From contig NW_005434487.1 of NCBI RefSeq assembly GCF_000315625.1, forward strand, positions 23,720-87,719: 64,000 nucleotides of DNA. Reading direction: 5' to 3'. Both the position numbers and the translations under genes were made by a program. A model generated the notes under the pieces. The model ran no database searches and had not been told where the DNA came from. It worked only from the letters and a program-made list of their open reading frames with translations. Shown in pieces: positions 8,754 to 63,992 of the stretch. Positions within the stretch are counted from its first letter, which is position 1. Every line of letters starts with the position of its first letter. Source of the DNA: Guillardia theta CCMP2712 (lineage: Eukaryota > Protista > Cryptophyta).

Positions 8754-11700
8754 ATGTCAGTGATGATTCAAGTCATCGGGCTCTTCCTCCTCAGCATGTC
8801 CTTGAATGCGGCGCAGGACACGTGCGATGCAGGCGGGGGTTTGGTCTACTCCTTTACCTTCTGCCCCAACGCCTTCTGTCTCGCCGGCTCCTACAGCTGC
8901 GCGCTGGGAGAGGTCGGCAGTTTCTCCATGGCAGAGAACTTGACAGGATGTCTGAGCGACTGCGACAGAGAGGCAGGATGCAGCCTGGCGACTTGGTGCC
9001 CCCTGTGCTCGAGCCCTAGATGCTTCCTCTTCACGTCCTGCAACGTGTGGGAGAGGAATCCCGTCGTCCTCGACCCCCTCCTGGGCATCAACGACATCTG
9101 CGAGGTTGAGAGGGAGACGAGAGGAAAGGAAGGATGAAAGAAAATAGACACAGAGAGGAGAGGAGAGGAGAGGAGAGAAGGAGAGGAGGGGACAGACTCG
9201 GAGAAGGAGAGGAGGGGAGGGGAGGAGGGGAAGGGAGAGGAGGGGAGGGGAGGAGAGGGGAGGGGAGGAGAGGAGAGAATGAAATGTGAGAAGAAAAATG
9301 ACGAGAGGAGAGAGAGGAGAGGAGGAGTTAGTAGGGAAGGAAGAGGGAAAGCAGGGAGGGAAAGAGGATGCGGCAGTTCTCTGACATGATCAAACGGTCA
9401 GGTTCCTCGCGACGATCGTGAGATTTCAGCGTTTAAAAATCGCGGGTGTGAGAAGAGAAGTCAAAAAGCTATTACCTATGTAATCAGCCTCATTCTTCAC
9501 TGCTCACTTTCTCCTCTCCTCTCGTTTCGTCTCCTCCTCGCCTCCCACGAATCTTCTTTCCTCTACTCTTCTTCTCGTCTCTTCCCCTCGGTTCTTGTTT
9601 TTCACACTTCTTCGTTCTGTGTTTCTACTCCTCTTCATTTTTATCCTGTTTGATCAGATGAGACAAGGAAATGAATTGCTTCCTGCTGGTCAAAGAGACT
9701 GCCTTTGCGAGTGAGCTGAAATCCATCTCCTCTCCTCTCCTCTCCTCTCCTCTCCTCTNNNNNNNNNNNNNNNNNNNNNNNNNNNNNNNNNNNNNNNNNN
9801 NNNNNNNNNNNNNNNNNNNNNNNNNNNNNNNNNNNNNNNNNNNNNNNNNNNNNNNNNNNNNNNNNNNNNNNNNNNNNNNNNNNNNNNNNNNNNNNNNNNN
9901 NNNNNNNNNNNNNNNNNNNNNNNNNNNNNNNNNNNNNNNNNNNNNNNNNNNNNNNNNNNNNNNNNNNNNNNNNNNNNNNNNNNNNNNNNNNNNNNNNNNN
10001 NNNNNNNNNNNNNNNNNNNNNNNNNNNNNNNNNNNNNNNNNNNNNNNNNNNNNNNNNNNNNNNNNNNNNNNNNNNNNNNNNNNNNNNNNNNNNNNNNNNN
10101 NNNNNNNNNNNNNNNNNNNNNNNNNNNNNNNNNNNNNNNNNNNNNNNNNNNNNNNNNNNNNNNNNNNNNNNNNNNNNNNNNNNNNNNNNNNNNNNNNNNN
10201 NNNNNCCTCCTCCTCCTCCTCCTCCTCCTCCTCCTCCTCCTCCTCCTCCTCCTCCTCCTCCTCCTCCTCCTCCTCCTCCTCCTCCTCCTCCTCCCTCCTC
10301 CCTCCCTCCCTCCCTCCCTCCCTCCCTCCTCCCTCCTCCCTCCTCCTCCTCCTCCTCCTCCTCCTCCTCCTCCTCCTCCTCCTCCTCCTCCTCCCTCCTC
10401 CTCCTCCTCCTCCTCCTCTCCCTCCTCCTCTCCCTCCTCCTCTCCCTCCTCTCCTCTCCCACGTCCTTCCCTCCCCTCCTCCTCCCCTCCCTCCTCCCCT
10501 CCCCTCCTCATCTCTCATATGCATCATTGCTTCTTATGCATGCGATCTCTCATCTCGTGAAAATGATCGTGCAATCGACGTCTGATGACATCTCTACAGC
10601 CCGTACGTTCCCCCGGACAATGCCATTGTCACTCCTCAAAGCTCCGTTCACTTTGGGCAGGAGGTGCTGGTGGAGTGCGAGCAAGGGTTTTACGCGGAGA
10701 AGGAGAGCAGACCGCAATGTCTCGGTGATGTTGGGATAGTCCAGATAAATCACAGGTGAGGCGAATGCTTGTACCCTCCTACTCTACTCCTCCTCCACCA
10801 CCACCACCCTCCTCCTCCTCCCCTTCCTCCTCCTCTCCTCCTCCTCCTCCTCTACTCCTCCTCCTCCTCTACTCCTCCTCCTCCTCTACTCCTCCTCCTC
10901 TACTCCTCCTCCATTCTTCCCACTTCGCAGAGGTTCATAGCTGTTTGTATTCGAAAGTAGCTCTCTCGTCCTCTTCCTATCCCTTTGATCTCCTGCTCTT
11001 CTAGGTACACTCCTGGTCTCCAATCCTGCCTGGCTTGTCCGGCGGATTCTAGCTCCAGGAGAGGAAGCGTCAGACTTGCTTCTTGCTCGTGCAACGGAGG
11101 ATACTTCAACAATCCTTCCTTCTCCCCCTCCTCCTTCTCCTCTTCCTCCCTCAACTCTTCCAACGTCACCTCGAACTCTTCCTCCCCCCTCTTCGCCTCC
11201 TCCAACTCCACGAGCTTCTGTCTCCTCTGCCCTCCAGGCAAGTACCGCGAGCCCTTCACCGTCGAGGTATGCCTCCTCTGTCCTCCTGGCACCTTCCAGC
11301 CCCTCCCGGGGGCTCCCAACGTGACCTCGTGCCTTGCTTGTCCGCCTGGCTCGACGTCTGCAGCAGGAGCTTCTCTTCTTGGCAGCTGCACCTGCGCCCC
11401 CGGTTACGCGGGCCGCTCGCCGTTCAACTGCTCCTCCTGCGGCTTCGGAAATTTCTCGAGCAGCGAGGGGGCTGAACGCTGCGAGCTCTGCCCTGCTGGC
11501 TCCTTCTCTGACGAGCTCTCCGCCACGACCTGCCACGATTGTCCACCAGGAACTTTCAGCTCCTCCTCCTCCTCCTCCTCCTGTTCCTCCTGCCCCCCTG
11601 CCTCCTTCTCCTCCGCGGGTGCCTCCCACCCCTCGGACTGCTTCTGCCTCGCAGGGTTTGAGGTGGACGGGAGCGGCGCGTGCGTCCCCTGCCGCAACGG

Positions 11701-12755
11701 GACGTTCAAGGAGGTGGAAGGGAACAGCAACTGCTCTCAGTGCCCGGAGAACTCGACGACGACGAGGACGGGAAGCACGAGCATCGCTCAGTGCGTCTGC
11801 CGTGCCGGCAACGAGGGAAGGGATGGGAACCCCTGCTCTCCTTGCCCTGCTGGATCCTACAAGAGCAAGGTGGGCGACGCTCCCTGCCTTCCCTGCCCTC
11901 CCTCCTCCTTCTCAGCTGCAGGTAGCGCCGTGTGCTCTCCATGCCCGGTCAACTCTACTCCCGCCGTGGGGCAGGCAGCGTGTGTCTGTGTTGCCGGGTA
12001 CGAACCGTCACCCCCGCTCGTCTCCTGCTCGATGTGCCCTGAGGGGAAGTACAAGCCGACGGCAGGGAACTTGCCTTGCTTGTCCTGCCAGGCAAACTCC
12101 ACGTCGCCGGCGGGGAGCCGAGCTTCCTTCAACTGCAGCTGCTTCCCTGGCTTCACGCGGGAGCTGGTGGTGCCCTGGTCGACCTGCGGAGGAGGATGCG
12201 CCTGTTTCCCTTCCATCGGCCAGCAGGAGGGGACTATCAGCGACGGGCCGGGGGACTACCCGGTCAGGACCGAGTGCTGGTGGATGATAGGAGGACGCAA
12301 CATTCACTTGGTGCTCAAGGAGGTGGACGTGGAGCGCGGCTTCGACTTCCTCCGGATCTCCTCCTGTCTCGATCCCTCCTGCAACGCCTCCCTGCCCCTC
12401 GCCTCCTTCACTGGCAGCGACGGAGTCAACGAGACCTTCTTCCTTCCAGCTGGAGCCTTCAGAGTTTCTCTCCTCTCAGACTTCGGCATCTCGGGTACTT
12501 ATCTCCGCGCCTACTTGCCCCTTCCCCCCTTGCTCTGCCCTCTTCCTCCCCACTCCTCCTCCCGGCTTTCCTCCCTGCTCGTTCTCCTTCACCTCTATTT
12601 CTCTCTCCTCGCTCTCTCCTACCGTTGGCCTTTCTTTCCCATCCCCCATCTTTCCCATCTTTCGCTCCTCACAAGCTAACTGCTTCTCTCCAGCCGCAGG
12701 CTTTGTCGCAGCGTGGCGGACGGACCCGGAAGGGTACTACTGCAATCCTCCTTGA
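8754..12755 (+). CDS. Secreted Cys-rich protein: signal peptide, PAN-like region, Sushi/CCP, many ephrin-receptor-like (GCC2/GCC3) Cys repeats, C-terminal CUB domain; multi-exon, spans an N gap
   Basis: N-terminus MSVMIQVIGLFLLSMSLNA; exon ~10600-10755 NAIVTPQSSVHFGQEVLVECEQGF (Sushi-like); repeated CxxCPxGxY/F; CUB motifs GTISDGPGDYP..CWWMI..VDVERGFDFLRI..LLSDFGISG; last exon FVAAWRTDPEGYYCNPP* ends at 12755. Confidence 0.8.
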
Positions 12756-57264: not shown

Positions 57265-57297
57265 TTTAGGGTTTAGAGGGTCTTGTTGGCAGCCTTG

Positions 57298-57356
57298 AGG
57301 GTTTAGGGTTTAGGGTTTAGGGTTTAGGGTTTAGGGTTTAGGGTTTAGGGTTTAGG
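57298..57356 (+). repeat. Telomeric tract 3, perfect (TTTAGGG)n
   Basis: Read directly; preceded by a 12-nt tract at 57265-57276 and a 21-nt insert. Confidence 0.97.
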
Positions 57357-57840
57357 AGCGCCGGTTATTTCAGGCAGCGCCGGTTATTTCAGGCAGCGCC
57401 GGTTATTTCAGGCAGCGCCGGTTATTTCAGGCAGCGCCGGTTATTTCAGGCAGCGCCGGTTATTTCAGGCAGCGCCGGTTATGGAAGACCACTGAAGTAT
57501 ATCAGAGGAGGGAGCAGAGCAGAAGCACGGCTGCCATAAGGGCCAGCCAAGTCGGGCCGCCGGTTATTTCAGGCAGCGCCGGTTATTTCAGGCAGCGCCG
57601 GTTATTTCAGGCAGCGCCGGTTATTTCAGGCAGCGCCGGTTATTTCAGGCAGCGCCGGTTATTTCAGGCAGCGCCGGTTATTTCAGGCAGCGCCGGTTAT
57701 TTCAGGCAGCGCCGGTTATTTCAGGCAGCGCCGGTTATTTCAGGCAGCGCCGGTTATTTCAGGCAGCGCCGGTTATTTCAGGCAGCGCCGGTTATTTCAG
57801 GCAGCGCCGGTTATTTCAGGCAGCGCCGGTTATTTCAGGC
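57357..57840 (+). repeat. Array of AGCGCCGGTTATTTCAGGC (about 21 copies) interrupted by a 75-nt unique insert at 57483-57557
   Basis: Read directly. Confidence 0.95.
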
Positions 57841-57932
57841 ACCATGGCTGCACGCGTGGTGTAGGGGAAGCTGCCAGGGCGCCAAGGAAGCTGCAAGCGA
57901 GAGGTTTGTATACTTCAAATAGCTTTCTAAGT

Positions 57933-60417
57933 ATGGTTCTTCAGTATGATGAAAATGTTCGCAACCTGCTGTATCGGAGATCATGCCAATACACGCAGAG
58001 CGGACTTGTGGATGCCTCTGTCCTCGAAGCTGATCTCGTCGAGAGGGTGAAGAGCTTCGCGAAGCGTTATCCGAACAGCAGGACAGCCCAGGCTTGCAAG
58101 GCTGTGGAGGGATGCACCCCCGACGCTATCGCAGAAGCCATCCGCTCGACATGTCAGCAGGCACGACGTGAGCTTCTACAAGAAGCGATGACTGGATGGA
58201 GTGACGCATCCAGAGAGTGGTTTATGCAGCAGATTGAAGAAGCCAAGAAGGAGAAGGTCGAGACATACACCGCCTCAGCAGGCAACGAGGTGACTTCCTT
58301 CATCTCCATGACTCTCCTGGGCATCTCCTCGGTGTATGTCAACGATGAAGAAAAGCTGAAGAAGAAATTTGAAGAGATCGGACTGATCGTAGACTCAGTG
58401 CAAGAGAGTAAAGCAATCATGTGGAAGGCTCCGTATAGACCCGAGATAGCGAGTGCTGAGGAGATCCCGGTGACTGTTTCCTTCCTCCGCAATGCACAAG
58501 CGGAGAAGCTCTGGCAGGGAAGAGAGGACTTCGCGATCGATGGTCGCAAGTTCACAGCTGTACATGTGAGCATCGTGCACGATCGATCTTTCAAGATTCG
58601 AGCCAAGAGAGGACCCTGGGGCAAAGGGGGCAGCTTGGCAGAGCTGACTCACCTGCTAACCTTGGGCGGCATGACAACGGCTGAGATAGCTGCCGTCTAT
58701 CGCTATCAGCTGCTGCGCCAGTCCCTTGCAGCGGTCCAACTCCAGCCGCTGGCAGGCATGCTGGTCGCTGGGGCGCCAGGCCAGCAAGTCCACAAAGGCT
58801 TAGGTCAGAAAGGCTTCGTCGCTGTAGGGGCCAACGTCATCTGGAGACAGAGGGAGGTGGAGTGGATCGTCTCCTCGAGCTGCCCAGAGGCGAATGATAC
58901 AGCATTTCGAGCTTTCCGAGAGAGCGAAGCGATGGAGGGAGTACACCTGACTCTGTTCAGCGAGGACCCGAAGATCAGAGAGGCGCTCGCAGTCGAGTTG
59001 ACAGCCGATCGCTTTGTGTCCAGAAATAAGTTGAAGAAGGCATCAAGGATGCAGAAGAAGGCAGGCGGCAAGGACGGCAAGGAGATCAAGATCATCATCA
59101 AGTCGACGGCGGCATCTGGTCGCTTCACGAGGAAGGAGATGGAGGGGCTGTGCAACGGCGGCAACACGTCTATCGCAAGAGTCAAGAGAGTCTTGTTGGA
59201 GATCGCTAACAGGCTCGAGATCAACGTTGAAGGCATCGACATGGAGGAGGATTTGAACACCAAGTCCTGGAACGGGTCCAAGCTATGCATCCTCCTCGGC
59301 TCCACGGAGGATGCTCGACGCATGATGAAGGAGCTGCCCTTCTATCTCGAAGGCGCAGCAACCAAGCTCGAAGCAGTCGGCTTCGACAAGGAGCCTGACT
59401 CTGAGGCGGCTGGTCAGCGGGGCACCAGCGACGCAGCGCAGCGACAGGAGGAGAGCGAGGGAGAGTGGCTGGAGTTTACAGACCTGGAGAGGATCACAAT
59501 GGAGGCAGCATCTCCGTCAAGCCAAGAGGACATGCAGCTCGTCAGCGAGCTGTCAGCAGTCATCGAAGATGCAGCTTCTTTGAACGAGGCAGGGACGAGC
59601 GAGCCGATCAAGCTGGTCCTGGACAAGGCCGTTGGCAACCTCCACGACACCTTCTACTCTCCGGGGAGCCTGGAGTTCATGGCGCTGGGAGAGTGGGCGA
59701 AGATGCCAGAGGAGCAGGGAGTTGGGCGCAACGCGCTCAAGGAGAAGCTGGGGAAGTGGCTGCAGAGCAAGCGCTGGACTCGCGTGCAAGGAGAGAGCAA
59801 GAAGGCAAGGAGGGGCAGCGCGTTCTCGCCACGGGCAACGGCAGCTGCTGAGCTTGAGCAGGAGGCGGAGAGCGACGACATAGAGCGTCGATCTCTTAGC
59901 CTCCTGTTCATAGCAGGGTTTAGGGGCAGGGACGAGCGAGCCGATCAAGCTGGTCCTGGACAAGGCCGTTGGCAACCTCCACGACACGTTCTACTCTCCG
60001 GGGAGCCTGGAGTTCATGGCGCTGGGAGAGTGGGCGAAGATGCCAGAGGAGCAGGGAGTGGGACGCAACGCGCTCAAGGAGAAGCTGGGGAAGTGGCTGC
60101 AGAGCAAGCGCTGGACTCGCGTGCAAGGAGAGAGCAAGAAGGCAAGGAGGGGCAGCGCGTTCTCGCCACGGGCAACGGCAGCTGCTGAGCTTGAGCAGGA
60201 GGCGGAGAGCGACGACATAGAGCGTCGATCTCTTAGCCTCCTGTTCATAGCACTGAGTAAATTCGCAGAGATGCATGTGCTGGCCTGCTCGCTGAAGGTG
60301 GACAAGAAGGACCGACTGCGAGTGGAGATGAGGGAAGATGACGAAGAAGAGGAAGACATGGAGGAAGAGCAAGGCGAGGGCGAGGAAGAAGACGGGGCGA
60401 GCCCGTACCGAGCTTGA
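57933..60417 (+). pseudogene. Subfamily A ORF disrupted by the internal duplication (frameshift after LSLLFIA)
   Basis: Near-identical to the copy 4 protein up to 59915; the native C-terminus is present in another frame (ORF 60016-60417). Confidence 0.8.
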
Positions 60418-60830
60418 GCTGAGCCCAAGGTAAGGAGAGAAGGTAGGAGGCGACCGAAGGCCAAGGTGGCGACCGAAGGCCAAGGTGAGGAGAGGCAACT
60501 CTTCTGAATGGAGACGAGTAGGTGGCGACCGAAGGCCAAGGTGAGGAGAGGCAACTCTTCTGACTGAGGCTGAGGAAGCCAAGAGAAGACAGCAGAAGTA
60601 GAGAGTAGAAAGACGCCTCAGAAGCAGGGTTCGCATTGTAGGCCGTGTACTCCCAGTGCTCGAGCGCCTCTTTAGACTAGGATCCAATTGCACAAGCCCA
60701 CAACGAGGCCTTGTAGGCCGTGTACTCCCAGTGCTCGAGCGCCTCTTTAGACTAGGATCAAATTGCAAAAGCCCACAACGAGGCCGAGCAACATTCTAGC
60801 ATTCTAATAAACTCACATAATAATAATAAT

Positions 60831-60902
60831 AGGGTTTAGGGTTTAGGGTTTAGGGTTTAGGGTTTAGGGTTTAGGGTTTAGGGTTTAGGGTTTAGGGTTT
60901 AG
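60831..60902 (+). repeat. Telomeric tract 4, perfect (TTTAGGG)n
   Basis: Read directly. Confidence 0.97.
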
Positions 60903-61325
60903 AGCGCCGGTTATTTCAGGCAGCGCCGGTTATTTCAGGCAAAAAGCGCCGGTTATTTCAGGCAAAAGCGCCAGCGCCGGTTATTTCAGGCAGCGCCGGT
61001 TATTTCAGGCAGCGCCGGTTATTTCAGGCAGCGCCGGTTATTTCAGGCAGCGCCGGTTATTTCAGGCAAGCGCCGGTTATTTCAGGCAAGCGCCGGTTAT
61101 TTCAGGCAAGCGCCGGTTATTTCAGGCAAGCGCCGGTTATTTCAGGCAAGCGCCGGTTATTTCAGGCAAGCGCCGGTTATTTCAGGCAAGCGCCGGTTAT
61201 TTCAGGCAAGCGCCGGTTATTTCAGGCAAGCGCCGGTTATTTCAGGCAAGCGCCGGTTATTTCAGGCAAGCGCCGGTTATTTCAGGCAGCGCCGGTTATT
61301 TCAGGCAGCGCCGGTTATTTCAGGC
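60903..61325 (+). repeat. Array of AGCGCCGGTTATTTCAGGC with variable extra A residues at unit junctions
   Basis: Junctions GGC-A-GCG, GGC-AA-GCG (11 in a row), GGC-AAAA-GCG and GGC-AAAAA-GCG, plus one abortive AGCGCC unit. Confidence 0.95.
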
Positions 61326-61417
61326 ACCATGGCTGCACGCGTGGTGTAGGGGAAGCTGCCAGGGCGCCAAGGAAGCTGCAAGCGACAGGTTTGTATACTT
61401 CAAATAGCTTTCTAAGT

Positions 61418-63565
61418 ATGGTTCTTCAGTATGATGAAAATGTTCGCAACCTGCTGTATCGGAGATCATGCCAATACACGCAGAGCGGACTTGTGGATGC
61501 CTCTGTCCTCGAAGCTGATCTCGTCGAGAGGGTGAAGAGCTTCGCGAAGCGTTATCCGAACAGCAGGACAGCCCAGGCTTGCAAGGCTGTGGAGGGATGC
61601 ACCCCCGACGCTATCGCAGAAGCCATCCGCTCGACATGTCAGCAGGCACGACGTGAGCTTCTGCAAGAAGCGATGACTGGATGGAGTGACGCATCCAGAG
61701 AGTGGTTTATGCAGCAGATTGAAGAAGCCAAGAAGGAGAAGGTCGAGACATACACCGCCTCAGCAGGCAACGAGGTGACTTCCTTCATCTCCATGACTCT
61801 CCTGGGCATCTCCTCGGTGTATGTCAACCATGAAGAAAAGCTGAAGAAGAAATTTGAAGAGATCGGACTGATCGTAGACTCAGTGCAAGAGAGTAAAGCG
61901 ATCATGTGGAAGGCTCCGTATAGACCCGAGATAGCGAGTGCTGAGGAGATCCCGGTGACTGTTTCCTTCCTCCGCAATGCACAAGCGGAGAAGCTCTGGC
62001 AGGGAAGAGAGGACTTCGCGATCGATGGTCGCAAGTTCACAGCTGTACATGTGAGCATCGTGCACGATCGATCTTTCAAGATTCGAGCCAAGAGAGGACC
62101 CTGGGGCAAAGGGGGCAGCTTGGCAGAGCTGACTCACCTGCTAACCTTGGGCGGCATGACAACGGCTGAGATAGCTGCCGTCTATCGCTATCAGCTGCTG
62201 CGCCAGTCCCTTGCAGCGGTCCAACTCCAGCCGCTGGCAGGCATGCTGGTCGCTGGGGCGCCAGGACAGCAAGTCCACAAAGGCTTAGGTCAGAAAGGCT
62301 TCATCGCTGTAGGGGCCAACGTCATCTGGAGACAGAGGGAGGTGGAGTGGATCGTCTCCTCGAGCTGCCCAGAGGCGAATGATACAGCATTTCGAGCTTT
62401 CCGAGAGAGCGAAGCGATGGAGGGAGTACACCTGACTCTGTTCAGCGAGGACCCGAAGATCAGAGAGGCGCTCGCAGTCGAGTTGACAGCTGATCGCTTT
62501 GTGTCCAGAAATAAGTTGAAGAAGGCATCAAGGATGCAGAAGAAGGCAGGCGGCAAGGACGGCAAGGAGATCAAGATCATCATCAAGTCGACGGCGGCAT
62601 CTGGTCGCTTCACGAGGAAGGAGATGGAGGGGCTGTGCAACGGCGGCAACACGTCTATCGCAAGAGTCAAGAGAGTCTTGTTGGAGATCGCTAACAGGCT
62701 CGAGATCAACGTTGAAGGCATCGACATGGAGGAGGATTTGAACACCAAGTCCTGGAACGGGTCCAAGCTATGCATCCTCCTCGGCTCCACGGAGGATGCT
62801 CGACGCATGATGAAGGAGCTGCCCTTCTATCTCGAAGGCGCAGCAACCAAGCTCGAAGCAGTCGGCTTCGACAAGGAGCCTGACTCTGAGGCGGCTGGTC
62901 AGCGGGGCACCAGCGACGCAGCGCAGCGACAGGAGGAGAGCGAGGGAGAGTGGCTGGAGTTTACAGACCTGGAGAGGATCACAATGGAGGCAGCATCTCC
63001 GTCAAGCCAAGAGGACATGCAGCTCGTCAGCGAGCTGTCAGCAGTCATCGAAGATGCAGCTTCTTTGAACGAGGCAGGGACGAGCGAGCCGATCAAGCTG
63101 GTCCTGGACAAGGCCGTTGGCAACCTCCACGACACCTTCTACTCTCCGGGGAGCCTGGAGTTCATGGCGCTGGGAGAGTGGGCGAAGATGCCAGAGGAGC
63201 AGGGAGTGGGACGCAACGCGCTCAAGGAGAGGCTGGGGAAGTGGCTGCAGAGCAAGCGCTGGACTCGCGTGCAAGGAGAGAGCAAGAAGGCAAGGAGGGG
63301 CAGCGCGTTCTCGCCACGGGCAACGGCAGCTGCTGAGCTTGAGCAGGAGGCGGAGAGCGACGACATAGAGCGTCGATCTCTTAGCCTCCTGTTCATAGCA
63401 CTGAGTAAATTCGCAGAGATGCATGTGCTGGCCTGCTCGCTGAAGGTGGACAAGAAGGACCGACTGCGAGTGGAGATGAGGGAAGATGACGAAGAAGAGG
63501 AAGACATGGAGGAAGAGCAAGGCGAGGGCGAGGAAGAAGACGGGGCGAGCCCGTACCGAGCTTGA
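61418..63565 (+). CDS. Element-encoded ~715-aa protein, probable ORF1/Gag-like nucleic-acid-binding protein with RRM-like repeats and an acidic tail
   Basis: Intronless ORF (unusual here), conserved between subfamilies. RRM-like patterns MTLLGIS..EEKLKKKFEEIG.IVDSV..VTVSF..AQAEKLW..IDGRKFTAV and IKIIIKS..IDMEEDLNTKSWNGSKLCILLGSTEDARRMM..LEGAATKLEAV. No YxDD RT motif. Confidence 0.75.
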   Translation: MVLQYDENVRNLLYRRSCQYTQSGLVDASVLEADLVERVKSFAKRYPNSRTAQACKAVEGCTPDAIAEAIRSTCQQARRELLQEAMTGWSDASREWFMQQIEEAKKEKVETYTASAGNEVTSFISMTLLGISSVYVNHEEKLKKKFEEIGLIVDSVQESKAIMWKAPYRPEIASAEEIPVTVSFLRNAQAEKLWQGREDFAIDGRKFTAVHVSIVHDRSFKIRAKRGPWGKGGSLAELTHLLTLGGMTTAEIAAVYRYQLLRQSLAAVQLQPLAGMLVAGAPGQQVHKGLGQKGFIAVGANVIWRQREVEWIVSSSCPEANDTAFRAFRESEAMEGVHLTLFSEDPKIREALAVELTADRFVSRNKLKKASRMQKKAGGKDGKEIKIIIKSTAASGRFTRKEMEGLCNGGNTSIARVKRVLLEIANRLEINVEGIDMEEDLNTKSWNGSKLCILLGSTEDARRMMKELPFYLEGAATKLEAVGFDKEPDSEAAGQRGTSDAAQRQEESEGEWLEFTDLERITMEAASPSSQEDMQLVSELSAVIEDAASLNEAGTSEPIKLVLDKAVGNLHDTFYSPGSLEFMALGEWAKMPEEQGVGRNALKERLGKWLQSKRWTRVQGESKKARRGSAFSPRATAAAELEQEAESDDIERRSLSLLFIALSKFAEMHVLACSLKVDKKDRLRVEMREDDEEEEDMEEEQGEGEEEDGASPYRA

Positions 63566-63992
63566 GCTGAGCCCAAGGTAAGGAGAGAAGGTAGGAGGCG
63601 ACCGAAGGCCAAGGTGAGGAGAGGCAACTCTCCTGACTGAAGCTGAGGAAGCTGAATGGAGGAGGAGTAGGTGGCGACCGAAGGCCAAGGTGAGGAGAGG
63701 CAACTCTCCTGACTGAGGCTGAGGAAGCTGAATGGAGGTAGAGTAGGTGGTGACCGAAGGCCAAGGTGAGGAGAGGCAACTCTCCTGACTGAGGCTGAGG
63801 AAGCCAAGAGAAGACAGCAGAAGTAGAGAGTAGAAAGACGCCTCAGAAGCAGGGTTCGCATTGTAGGCCGTGTACTCCCAGTGCTCGAGCGCCTCTTTAG
63901 ACTAGGATCAAATTGCACAAGCCCACAACGAGGCCGAGCAACATTCTAGCATTCTAATAAACTCACATAATAATAATAATAATAATAATAAT

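What the first reader, a model, noticed from the sequence alone, without database searches (positions are those of the whole stretch)
59589..60252. Element stops, gains ~1.5 telomere repeats, then restarts upstream on a slightly different template
Seen: copy 3 breaks at ..TTCATAGCA, continues GGGTTTAGGG (AGGGTTTAGGG at 59915-59925), then resumes at GCAGGGACGAGC, duplicating 327 nt. The two duplicates differ (GACACCTTC vs GACACGTTC; GGAGTTGGGCGC vs GGAGTGGGACGC, the latter matching copy 4). Inference: this is not local slippage. The growing 3' end was handed from element copying to telomerase and back to another element molecule, a footprint of alternating synthesis by RT template switching or break-induced replication.
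Basis: partly seen in the sequence, partly recalled or inferred. Interest (0 to 1): 0.85.

Follow-up and report, generated by a model that had tools for sequence, protein, structure and literature searches.

The report
Telomere-repeat scar between two element copies
At one chromosome end of the alga Guillardia theta, a telomere-targeted retroelement copy was cut short, capped with about one and a half telomere repeats, and then followed by a second copy that lacks its front and came from a different source; this looks like ordinary end erosion, telomerase healing and re-addition, not a new kind of DNA synthesis.

Summary
Element sequence runs to 59915, GGGTTTAGGG follows (59916-59925), and the element resumes at 59926, 327 nt upstream.

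The two 327-nt duplicates differ at 3 sites. All 3 are sites where copies of this family differ from each other. The second duplicate is 495/495 identical to a copy on another scaffold. So two source copies were used, and this is not slippage.

The window is the end of Guillardia theta CCMP2712 scaffold JH993151.1. It carries a head-to-tail array of RT-less single-ORF elements separated by TTTAGGG tracts. A reverse-transcriptase LINE sits in the same kind of array, in the same orientation, and shares the invariant 3' box, a trinucleotide tail and the telomere junction. Across 12 scaffold ends, both 3'-cut copies capped by telomere repeats and 5'-truncated copies joined to telomere repeats are common.

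Best reading (about 0.5): erosion or breakage, then telomerase healing, then addition of a new 5'-truncated copy. The 327-nt overlap would be incidental.

Rival (about 0.25): a homology-anchored recombinational restart. Three other scars hint at this (Fisher p about 0.005-0.015).

No independent run shows the junction, but the contig data lose variants, so authenticity rests on the reference assembly alone. The closest known system is the MoTeR arrays of Magnaporthe.

The parts
57298..57356 (+). Telomere tract (TTTAGGG)n before copy 3. It ends in the family's usual phase, TTTAGG.
57357..59915 (+). Copy 3A, subfamily S1. It has the 19-nt 5' array (with a 75-nt foreign piece at 57483-57557), the 5' UTR, and the ORF from 57933. 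It is cut at element position 2503 and lacks its 3' end.
   Evidence: 99.5% identical to copy 4 over 2078 nt.
59589..59915 (+). Duplicate A, the last 327 nt of copy 3A.
   Evidence: Its haplotype carries T135/G138, shared with copies in L004 and L007.
59916..59925 (+). Telomere-repeat scar GGGTTTAGGG, in G-strand orientation.
59926..60252 (+). Duplicate B, the first 327 nt of the second, 5'-truncated copy.
   Evidence: Its haplotype is identical to L003 19997-20323.
59926..60830 (+). Copy 3B, a 5'-truncated S1 copy running from element position about 2175-2177 to the 3' box and (ATA)n tail. Its 3' UTR has its own repeat structure, including a 75-nt tandem duplication.
60831..60902 (+). Telomere tract between copy 3B and copy 4.
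60903..63992 (+). Copy 4, a full-length S1 element (5' array of 19/20-nt units, 724-aa ORF at 61391-63565, 3' UTR, (AAT)n). It was used as the coordinate reference. Telomere repeats follow to the window end.

Best explanation
Two separate events at a chromosome tip.

(1) Copy 3 was the terminal element, with its 3' end facing the tip. The end eroded or broke back to element position 2503. Telomerase then added TTTAGGG repeats directly onto ...TTCATAGCA, with a 1-nt overlap. This is telomere healing.

(2) A new copy of the same family, made from a different source copy, was later joined to that tract. The most likely route is target-primed reverse transcription by the partner LINE, starting at the element's 3' box and tail and stopping early at about position 2175. 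This gives the 5' truncation typical of LINEs. Only 9-10 nt of telomere repeat remain between the two copies, joined in the family's usual phase (TTTAGG|GGCAGGG).

On this reading the 327-nt duplication is only the overlap between where the old copy was cut and where the new copy stopped.

Shown: the anatomy, the two sources, and that both kinds of truncation are common in the family. Inferred: the order of events, the action of telomerase, and the RNA intermediate.
For: - Two sources.
- The family behaves as a non-autonomous partner of a LINE. An ORF with RVT_1 (E 3e-29) lies in the same orientation in the arrays (L003). A relative with an N-terminal Exo_endo_phos match is 77% identical to the start of that ORF. 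The terminal box TCTAATAAACTCA, an (NTA)n tail and the telomere junction are shared by the LINE and by subfamilies S1 and S2.
- 5'-truncated copies sit directly on telomere tracts where no cut copy of the same family lies upstream: L005 13925, L011 9469, L012 16799.
- 3'-cut copies capped by telomere repeats in variable phase: window 55571 and 57265, L002 10044, L003 20841, L008 11098.
- 41 of 52 telomere tracts end in TTTAG, TTTAGG or TTTAGGG before whatever follows, and this junction fits.
- Tracts of 10-18 nt between copies are usual, so 10 nt is not special.
- Copies within one array are not consistently more alike than copies in different arrays, and no near-identical multi-element blocks are shared between ends. 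Both fit addition in trans.
Against: - Three other cut-telomere-restart scars exist in the family, and two restart very near the cut coordinate: L008, stop 1620 to restart 1667; L002, stop 563 to restart 557. With this junction and L010, the closeness is unlikely under independent cuts (Fisher p 0.005; 0.015 with a fifth, non-local case). That points to a homology-guided process for at least some scars.
- The endonuclease assignment rests on a Pfam match below the curated cut-off.
- No RNA intermediate is shown.
- The junction is seen only in the reference assembly.
Confidence: 0.5

Rival explanations
1. Homology-anchored recombinational restart. The healed but very short telomere became uncapped. 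The resected 3' strand paired, through its element part, with an element copy at another end or on the sister chromatid. The unpaired telomeric tip then primed by 1-2 nt of microhomology a few hundred bases away, and synthesis ran on (break-induced replication or synthesis-dependent annealing with template switching). This would keep the telomere seed as a scar and duplicate 327 nt.
For: - Restarts tend to lie near the cut coordinate across scars: offsets -328, +47, -6 and +761.
- The sequence on each side of the scar comes from a different source copy or subfamily in the window, L008 and L002.
- A 10-nt tract is too short to be a working telomere (inference).
- Breakage, healing, break-induced replication and D-loop events are documented in telomeric retrotransposon arrays of Magnaporthe (PMC7367193).
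Against: - For this junction alone, an offset of 328 has p about 0.23.
- No donor end or shared multi-element block was found among 12 ends.
- The right-hand junction has the family's ordinary attachment phase.
- 5'-truncated copies also follow complete copies, where there is nothing to anchor on.
- Retaining a 3' flap during strand invasion is unusual (own knowledge).
Confidence: 0.25
2. One retrotransposition event with template jumps. The reverse transcriptase copied RNA B from its 3' end to about position 2175. It then jumped to the 3' end of a transcript from a cut, telomere-healed copy (ending ...TTCATAGCA plus telomere repeats) and copied that to its 5' array.
For: Template-switch footprints are frequent in the family. 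Array or leader sequence is fused to internal body positions in L002 10150, L010 9434 and L012 about 15960. A 75-nt piece of the S2 3' UTR lies inside the S1 array at 57483-57557.
Against: - It needs a source locus with the same cut at position 2503. All contigs of four runs that reach 59915 continue with the normal element.
- It explains neither the offset nor the short tract better than two separate events do.
Confidence: 0.08
3. Assembly or cloning artefact. The reference joined a telomere-capped cut copy from one end to a 5'-truncated copy from another end.
For: - No public run holds the three sampled junction words.
- No contig in four runs from four studies crosses 59916-59924. Every path continues canonically on both sides.
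- The arrays in this assembly contain many gaps.
Against: - Only 10 nt of telomere repeat lie between the parts, too little for an overlap join. At least one cloned molecule must have carried the whole junction (inference).
- Analogous scars occur on other scaffolds, and a telomere-to-internal-element junction occurs in an independent run (X15 at 59839).
- The contig sets lose variants. The G at 60019 is carried by 7 of 18 sampled reference copies but is absent from three of the four sets.
Confidence: 0.1
4. Local tandem duplication or slippage within one copy, with a short telomere insertion during double-strand-break repair, followed by later mutation of the duplicates.
For: Short telomere insertions at repaired breaks are known in other organisms (own knowledge). 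L008 (49 nt lost, 45 nt of telomere gained) fits that pattern.
Against: The three A/B differences all hit pre-existing family polymorphisms, and B equals another genomic copy exactly.
Confidence: 0.03

Closest known systems
MoTeR1/MoTeR2 telomeric retrotransposon arrays of Magnaporthe oryzae (PMC7367193)
   Same: - Head-to-tail arrays of an RT element and a shorter RT-less partner inside telomeres, separated by interstitial telomere tracts.
- Cut copies capped by telomerase.
- Documented break, healing, break-induced replication and D-loop rearrangements.
- High turnover in culture.
   Different: - A different organism group and a different telomere repeat.
- By my reading of the junction motifs in that paper, MoTeR sense strands run from the tip inward. 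Here the sense strand is the G strand, with the 3' end facing the tip.
- The 5' arrays here are 19-20-nt subfamily-specific units, not variant telomere repeats.
SART1/TRAS1 telomere-repeat-specific LINEs of Bombyx mori (PMC7265360)
   Same: - LINEs that insert into double-stranded telomere repeats after endonuclease nicking.
- Fixed junction phase.
- Either orientation is possible.
- Mobilisation in trans through the 3' UTR.
   Different: - Those are autonomous elements with poly(A) tails. Here there are several RT-less single-ORF families with (NTA)n tails.
- Endonuclease specificity was not tested here.
- Telomerase is evidently active here.
HeT-A/TART/TAHRE of Drosophila (own knowledge; PMC5537684 seen in listing only)
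   Same: An RT-less Gag-only element (HeT-A) that depends on partners, forming head-to-tail terminal arrays and healing broken ends.
   Different: Drosophila has no telomerase and no telomere repeats between copies. The elements attach by their 3' ends, so the 5' end faces the tip. That is the opposite polarity.
Y' acquisition by short telomeres through break-induced replication in yeast (own knowledge)
   Same: Subtelomeric elements in tandem, separated by short internal telomere tracts. Short telomeres trigger recombinational copying from another end.
   Different: Y' is not a retroelement. Copying starts in telomere-tract homology and gives whole units, not internal restarts with retained seeds.

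Membership tests
Non-autonomous partner of a telomere-targeted LINE (non-LTR retrotransposon) | A reverse-transcriptase element is present in the same genome and niche. | tested here: met
   RVT_1 at E 3e-29 in L003:672-2231, in the same orientation, in an array that ends on telomere repeats.
Non-autonomous partner of a telomere-targeted LINE (non-LTR retrotransposon) | The 3' end is shared with the autonomous element. | tested here: met
   Invariant box TCTAATAAACTCA, an (NTA)n tail and the telomere junction are present in the LINE, S1 and S2. The sequences are unrelated upstream of the box.
Non-autonomous partner of a telomere-targeted LINE (non-LTR retrotransposon) | 5' truncated copies occur. 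| tested here: met
   At least six cases sit directly on telomere tracts.
Non-autonomous partner of a telomere-targeted LINE (non-LTR retrotransposon) | The partner carries an endonuclease that nicks the target. | tested here: inconclusive
   P0043 has an Exo_endo_phos match at 18.2 bits, below the 24.5 cut-off, and is linked to the RT ORF by 77% identity over 101 aa. The N-terminus of the L003 and L008 copies lies outside the loci.
Non-autonomous partner of a telomere-targeted LINE (non-LTR retrotransposon) | Movement goes through an RNA intermediate. | not testable with these tools
   The runs are contigs of uncertain RNA or DNA origin.
De novo telomere addition (healing) at a broken or eroded end | G-strand repeats are joined directly to non-telomeric sequence with 0-3 nt of overlap, in a phase set by the end. 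| tested here: met
   At 59915/59916 there is a 1-nt overlap. Start phases vary among cut copies but are fixed (TAGGG) after complete copies.
De novo telomere addition (healing) at a broken or eroded end | The site was the physical chromosome end when repeats were added. | not testable with these tools
   Inferred from the orientation and from the position in a terminal array.
Break-induced replication or template switching from another end | A donor locus shares everything distal to the switch. | tested here: not met
   None was found among 12 ends. The best multi-element alignments are 97-98% identical. Sampling is incomplete.
Break-induced replication or template switching from another end | The restart is guided by homology, so cut and restart coordinates lie close together. 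| tested here: inconclusive
   Family-wide p is 0.005-0.015, but 0.23 for this junction alone.
Replication slippage or simple tandem duplication | The duplicates derive from one template. | tested here: not met

The most novel reading that the evidence does not exclude
Telomerase and an element-copying polymerase work in relay on the same G-strand 3' end. After a stall or cut, telomerase adds a short seed, and the end is then guided back to a nearly homologous coordinate of a different element copy. Chromosome ends in this alga would then be maintained by a coupled relay between telomerase and template switching, and the scars in the window, L002 and L008 would be its footprints.
Probability: 0.2. 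Interest if true: 0.7.

Novelty: new member of a known kind. Interest (0 to 1): 0.4.

Why it matters
The junction is a dated footprint of three processes acting on one chromosome tip of a cryptophyte alga: erosion, telomerase healing and retroelement addition. I found no paper on telomeric elements in this group.

G. theta keeps active telomerase alongside a telomere-targeted LINE and several RT-less partners whose 3' ends face the tip. That makes it a useful contrast to Drosophila, Bombyx and Magnaporthe for asking how telomerase and retroelements share or compete for chromosome ends.

The junction by itself is explained by known processes.

Tried and rejected
- **Slippage or tandem duplication:** rejected on haplotypes.
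- **Insertion with a target-site duplication:** rejected, because the flanks come from different source copies here and from different subfamilies in L002.
- **The second scar (57265-57297) as a restart at the same coordinate:** rejected. In a full-length S2 copy the cut point is followed by unrelated sequence. The 21-nt fragment has only a 12/13 match at S1 position 1775-1787 and occurs nowhere else in the loci.
- **Within-array homogeneity as a sign of local recombinational amplification:** the two regions tested disagree (p 0.018 and 0.95).
- **Search for break-induced-replication donor blocks:** none found.
- **Independent support for the junction:**
  - No run was listed for the junction words.
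  - No spanning contig in four runs.
  - No hit in JGI metagenome contigs.
- **Pfam on the element ORF:** nothing significant.
- **Endonuclease domains in the accessible parts of the LINE:** none found.

Full report
**Where this is**

The element ORF (61418-63565) is 95-100% identical to about a dozen hypothetical proteins of Guillardia theta CCMP2712. About 40 paralogues were found, plus one 37% relative in Hanusia phi. The locus fetched for the gene model that covers copy 3 is the last 16 kb of scaffold JH993151.1 and equals the window end, base for base (one search gives identical maps for L001 and the window). The window is therefore the terminal 64 kb of a scaffold of the reference assembly of this cryptophyte alga.

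From 54931 to the window end, the + strand carries TTTAGGG tracts alternating with four element copies, all in one orientation:
- Copy 1 is cut at element position about 957 and capped by telomere repeats.
- Copy 2 belongs to a second subfamily (S2). It is also cut and capped.
- Copy 3 holds the finding.
- Copy 4 is full length.

**The observation**

One search confirms it exactly. Duplicate A is 59589-59915, the insert GGGTTTAGGG is 59916-59925, and duplicate B is 59926-60252.

A and B differ at element positions 63, 135 and 138. Copy 4 agrees with A at 63 and with B at 135 and 138, and differs from both at 158.

Overlaps at the two joints are 1 nt (left) and 1-2 nt (right). The frame is broken. 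The reference annotation hides this by calling a 43-nt intron at 59889-59931, which gives an 813-aa protein with an internal repeat.

**Two sources, not slippage**

Among 18 copies of this 327-nt stretch from 8 scaffold ends, 14 sites vary, and the three A/B differences are three of those sites. The chance of that for random later mutations is about 6e-5.

B's haplotype equals that of L003 19997-20323, and B plus the next 168 nt is 495/495 identical to that copy on scaffold JH993147.1. The part before the scar is closest (99.5%) to copy 4 and to a copy in L005. The 3' UTR after B has its own repeat structure, unlike copy 4.

**What the elements are**

The 724-aa ORF has no significant Pfam match.

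In L003, an ORF with a reverse-transcriptase domain (RVT_1, E 3e-29) lies in the same orientation in an array and ends on telomere repeats. The same element's tail is seen in L008 and L010. A relative, P0043, carries an N-terminal Exo_endo_phos match that is below the Pfam cut-off. Its C-terminus is 77% identical to the start of the L003 RT ORF.

The LINE and the RT-less subfamilies S1 and S2 share an invariant terminal box (TCTAATAAACTCA), followed by a trinucleotide tail and then telomere repeats. They are unrelated upstream of the box. This is the usual signature of non-autonomous partners mobilised by a LINE. For such elements, copying starts at the 3' end.

Because the sense strand is the G strand, the primer would be a nicked C strand. 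This is the geometry known for one of the two Bombyx telomeric LINE families (PMC7265360).

**Family-wide junction anatomy across 12 scaffold ends** (maps)
- Complete copies end (NTA)n|TAGGG in a fixed phase.
- Cut copies are capped in variable phase with 0-3 nt of overlap, as expected for telomerase acting on eroded ends.
- 41 of 52 tracts end in TTTAG, TTTAGG or TTTAGGG before whatever follows. The junction at 59925 fits this, read as TTTAGG|GGCAGGG.
- Tracts between copies are often only 10-18 nt long.
- 5'-truncated copies directly on telomere tracts are common, including after complete copies or after unique sequence (L012 16799, L005 13925, L011 9469).
- Array or leader sequence is fused to internal body positions in L002, L010 and L012, and to position about 1729 in L003.
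- A 75-nt piece of the S2 3' UTR lies inside the S1 array of copy 3. Template switching is therefore frequent in this family.

**Best reading**

The tip eroded or broke into copy 3, telomerase healed it, and a new 5'-truncated copy from another source was added in the usual way. Every component of this is independently common in the family, and a 10-nt tract is ordinary. Array copies are not consistently more alike within ends than between ends, and no multi-element blocks are shared between ends. Both results fit addition in trans.

**What speaks for something more**

Three other scars have a cut copy, then telomere repeats, then a front-truncated copy:
- L008: stop at 1620, 45 nt of telomere, restart at 1667. 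The two sides belong to different haplotype groups.
- L002: an S1 copy stops at 563, followed by 43 nt of telomere and 3.5 array units, then an S2-like copy restarts at 557.
- L010: stop at 1820, restart at 2581.

Combined with this junction, the closeness of cut and restart coordinates is unlikely for independent events. Fisher p is 0.005, or 0.015 with a fifth, non-local case. For this junction alone p is about 0.23.

A homology-anchored recombinational restart therefore stays as a serious rival. Breakage, healing, break-induced replication and D-loop events are documented in Magnaporthe MoTeR arrays (PMC7367193).

**Is the junction real?**
- Twenty public runs hold the element at 0.62-0.69 of the sampled words.
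- None holds the three sampled junction words.
- In four runs from four studies, every contig that reaches 59915 continues with the normal element. Every contig that starts at 59925 comes from the normal upstream sequence.
- A scan of metagenome contigs for the 28-mer found nothing.

This is weak evidence. All four runs are contig sets that lose variants. The G at 60019 is present in 7 of the 18 reference copies sampled but is missing from three of the four sets.

In favour of a real molecule, 10 nt of telomere repeat is too short for an overlap join. Similar scars also exist on other scaffolds, and one run (X15) has a contig with telomere repeats running straight into element position about 2427. 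I put an artefact at about 0.1.

**Novelty**

I found no paper on telomeric elements of G. theta or other cryptophytes. The kind of system is known from Magnaporthe, Bombyx and Drosophila, and so is the kind of scar, so this is a new member of a known kind.

The scan's first-stage notes on this same window and on other pieces of this genome had already flagged the array, its polarity and an RT master element. I checked the RT element and the shared 3' end myself.

Noticed in passing
window 57483-57557: The 75-nt foreign piece inside the S1 19-nt array of copy 3 is a segment of the 3' UTR of subfamily S2. It matches L009 at about 12545-12620. This is a template-switch footprint between subfamilies.
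   Followed up: partly
L002 10001-10180: An S1 copy stops at position 563. It is followed by 43 nt of telomere repeats and 3.5 units of a different 20-nt array. An S2-like copy then resumes at position 557, so 6 nt (TGTATC) are present on both sides.
   Followed up: partly
L008 11098-11142: 45 nt of telomere repeats replace 46-49 nt inside an otherwise continuous S1 copy. The left and right flanks belong to different haplotype groups, and the right joint is not in the usual phase.
   Followed up: partly
window 59889-59931: The reference gene model GUITHDRAFT_120621 (813 aa) calls a 43-nt intron that removes the telomere scar and restores the frame. This is an annotation artefact that yields a protein with an internal repeat.
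   Followed up: yes
L003 1-5784; L008 1-3325; L010 before 9148: A reverse-transcriptase LINE lies in the same arrays and orientation. It shares only the terminal box, the trinucleotide tail and the telomere junction with the RT-less families.
   Followed up: partly
L002 about 10150; L012 15947-15965; L010 about 9434; L003 5831-5873: The array or leader sequence (for example CACCGGGCCC..TG) is fused directly to internal body positions (557, 2268, 909, about 1729). These are 5'-truncated bodies that still carry a 5' array.
   Followed up: no
L005 12531-13902: An S2 copy lies inverted inside an otherwise head-to-tail array. It is flanked by telomere tracts and followed by a 149-nt 3'-end fragment of S1.
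   Followed up: no
L009 about 9630-9650; L008 about 7256 and about 9640: New 5' arrays are joined directly to a cut 3' UTR or to other sequence, with no telomere repeats between them.
   Followed up: no
L003 16015-18966: A 2.95-kb insertion with terminal inverted repeats (CCATTCCATGGCATT...) interrupts an S1 copy.
   Followed up: no
L011 11876-12387: A 512-nt telomere tract is followed by another element start. Long tracts can therefore be interstitial.
   Followed up: no
run X15, laid at window 59839 and 59809: Two independent contigs were seen. In one, telomere repeats run straight into element position about 2427. The other is a variant lacking about 143 nt (positions 2398-2540).
   Followed up: no
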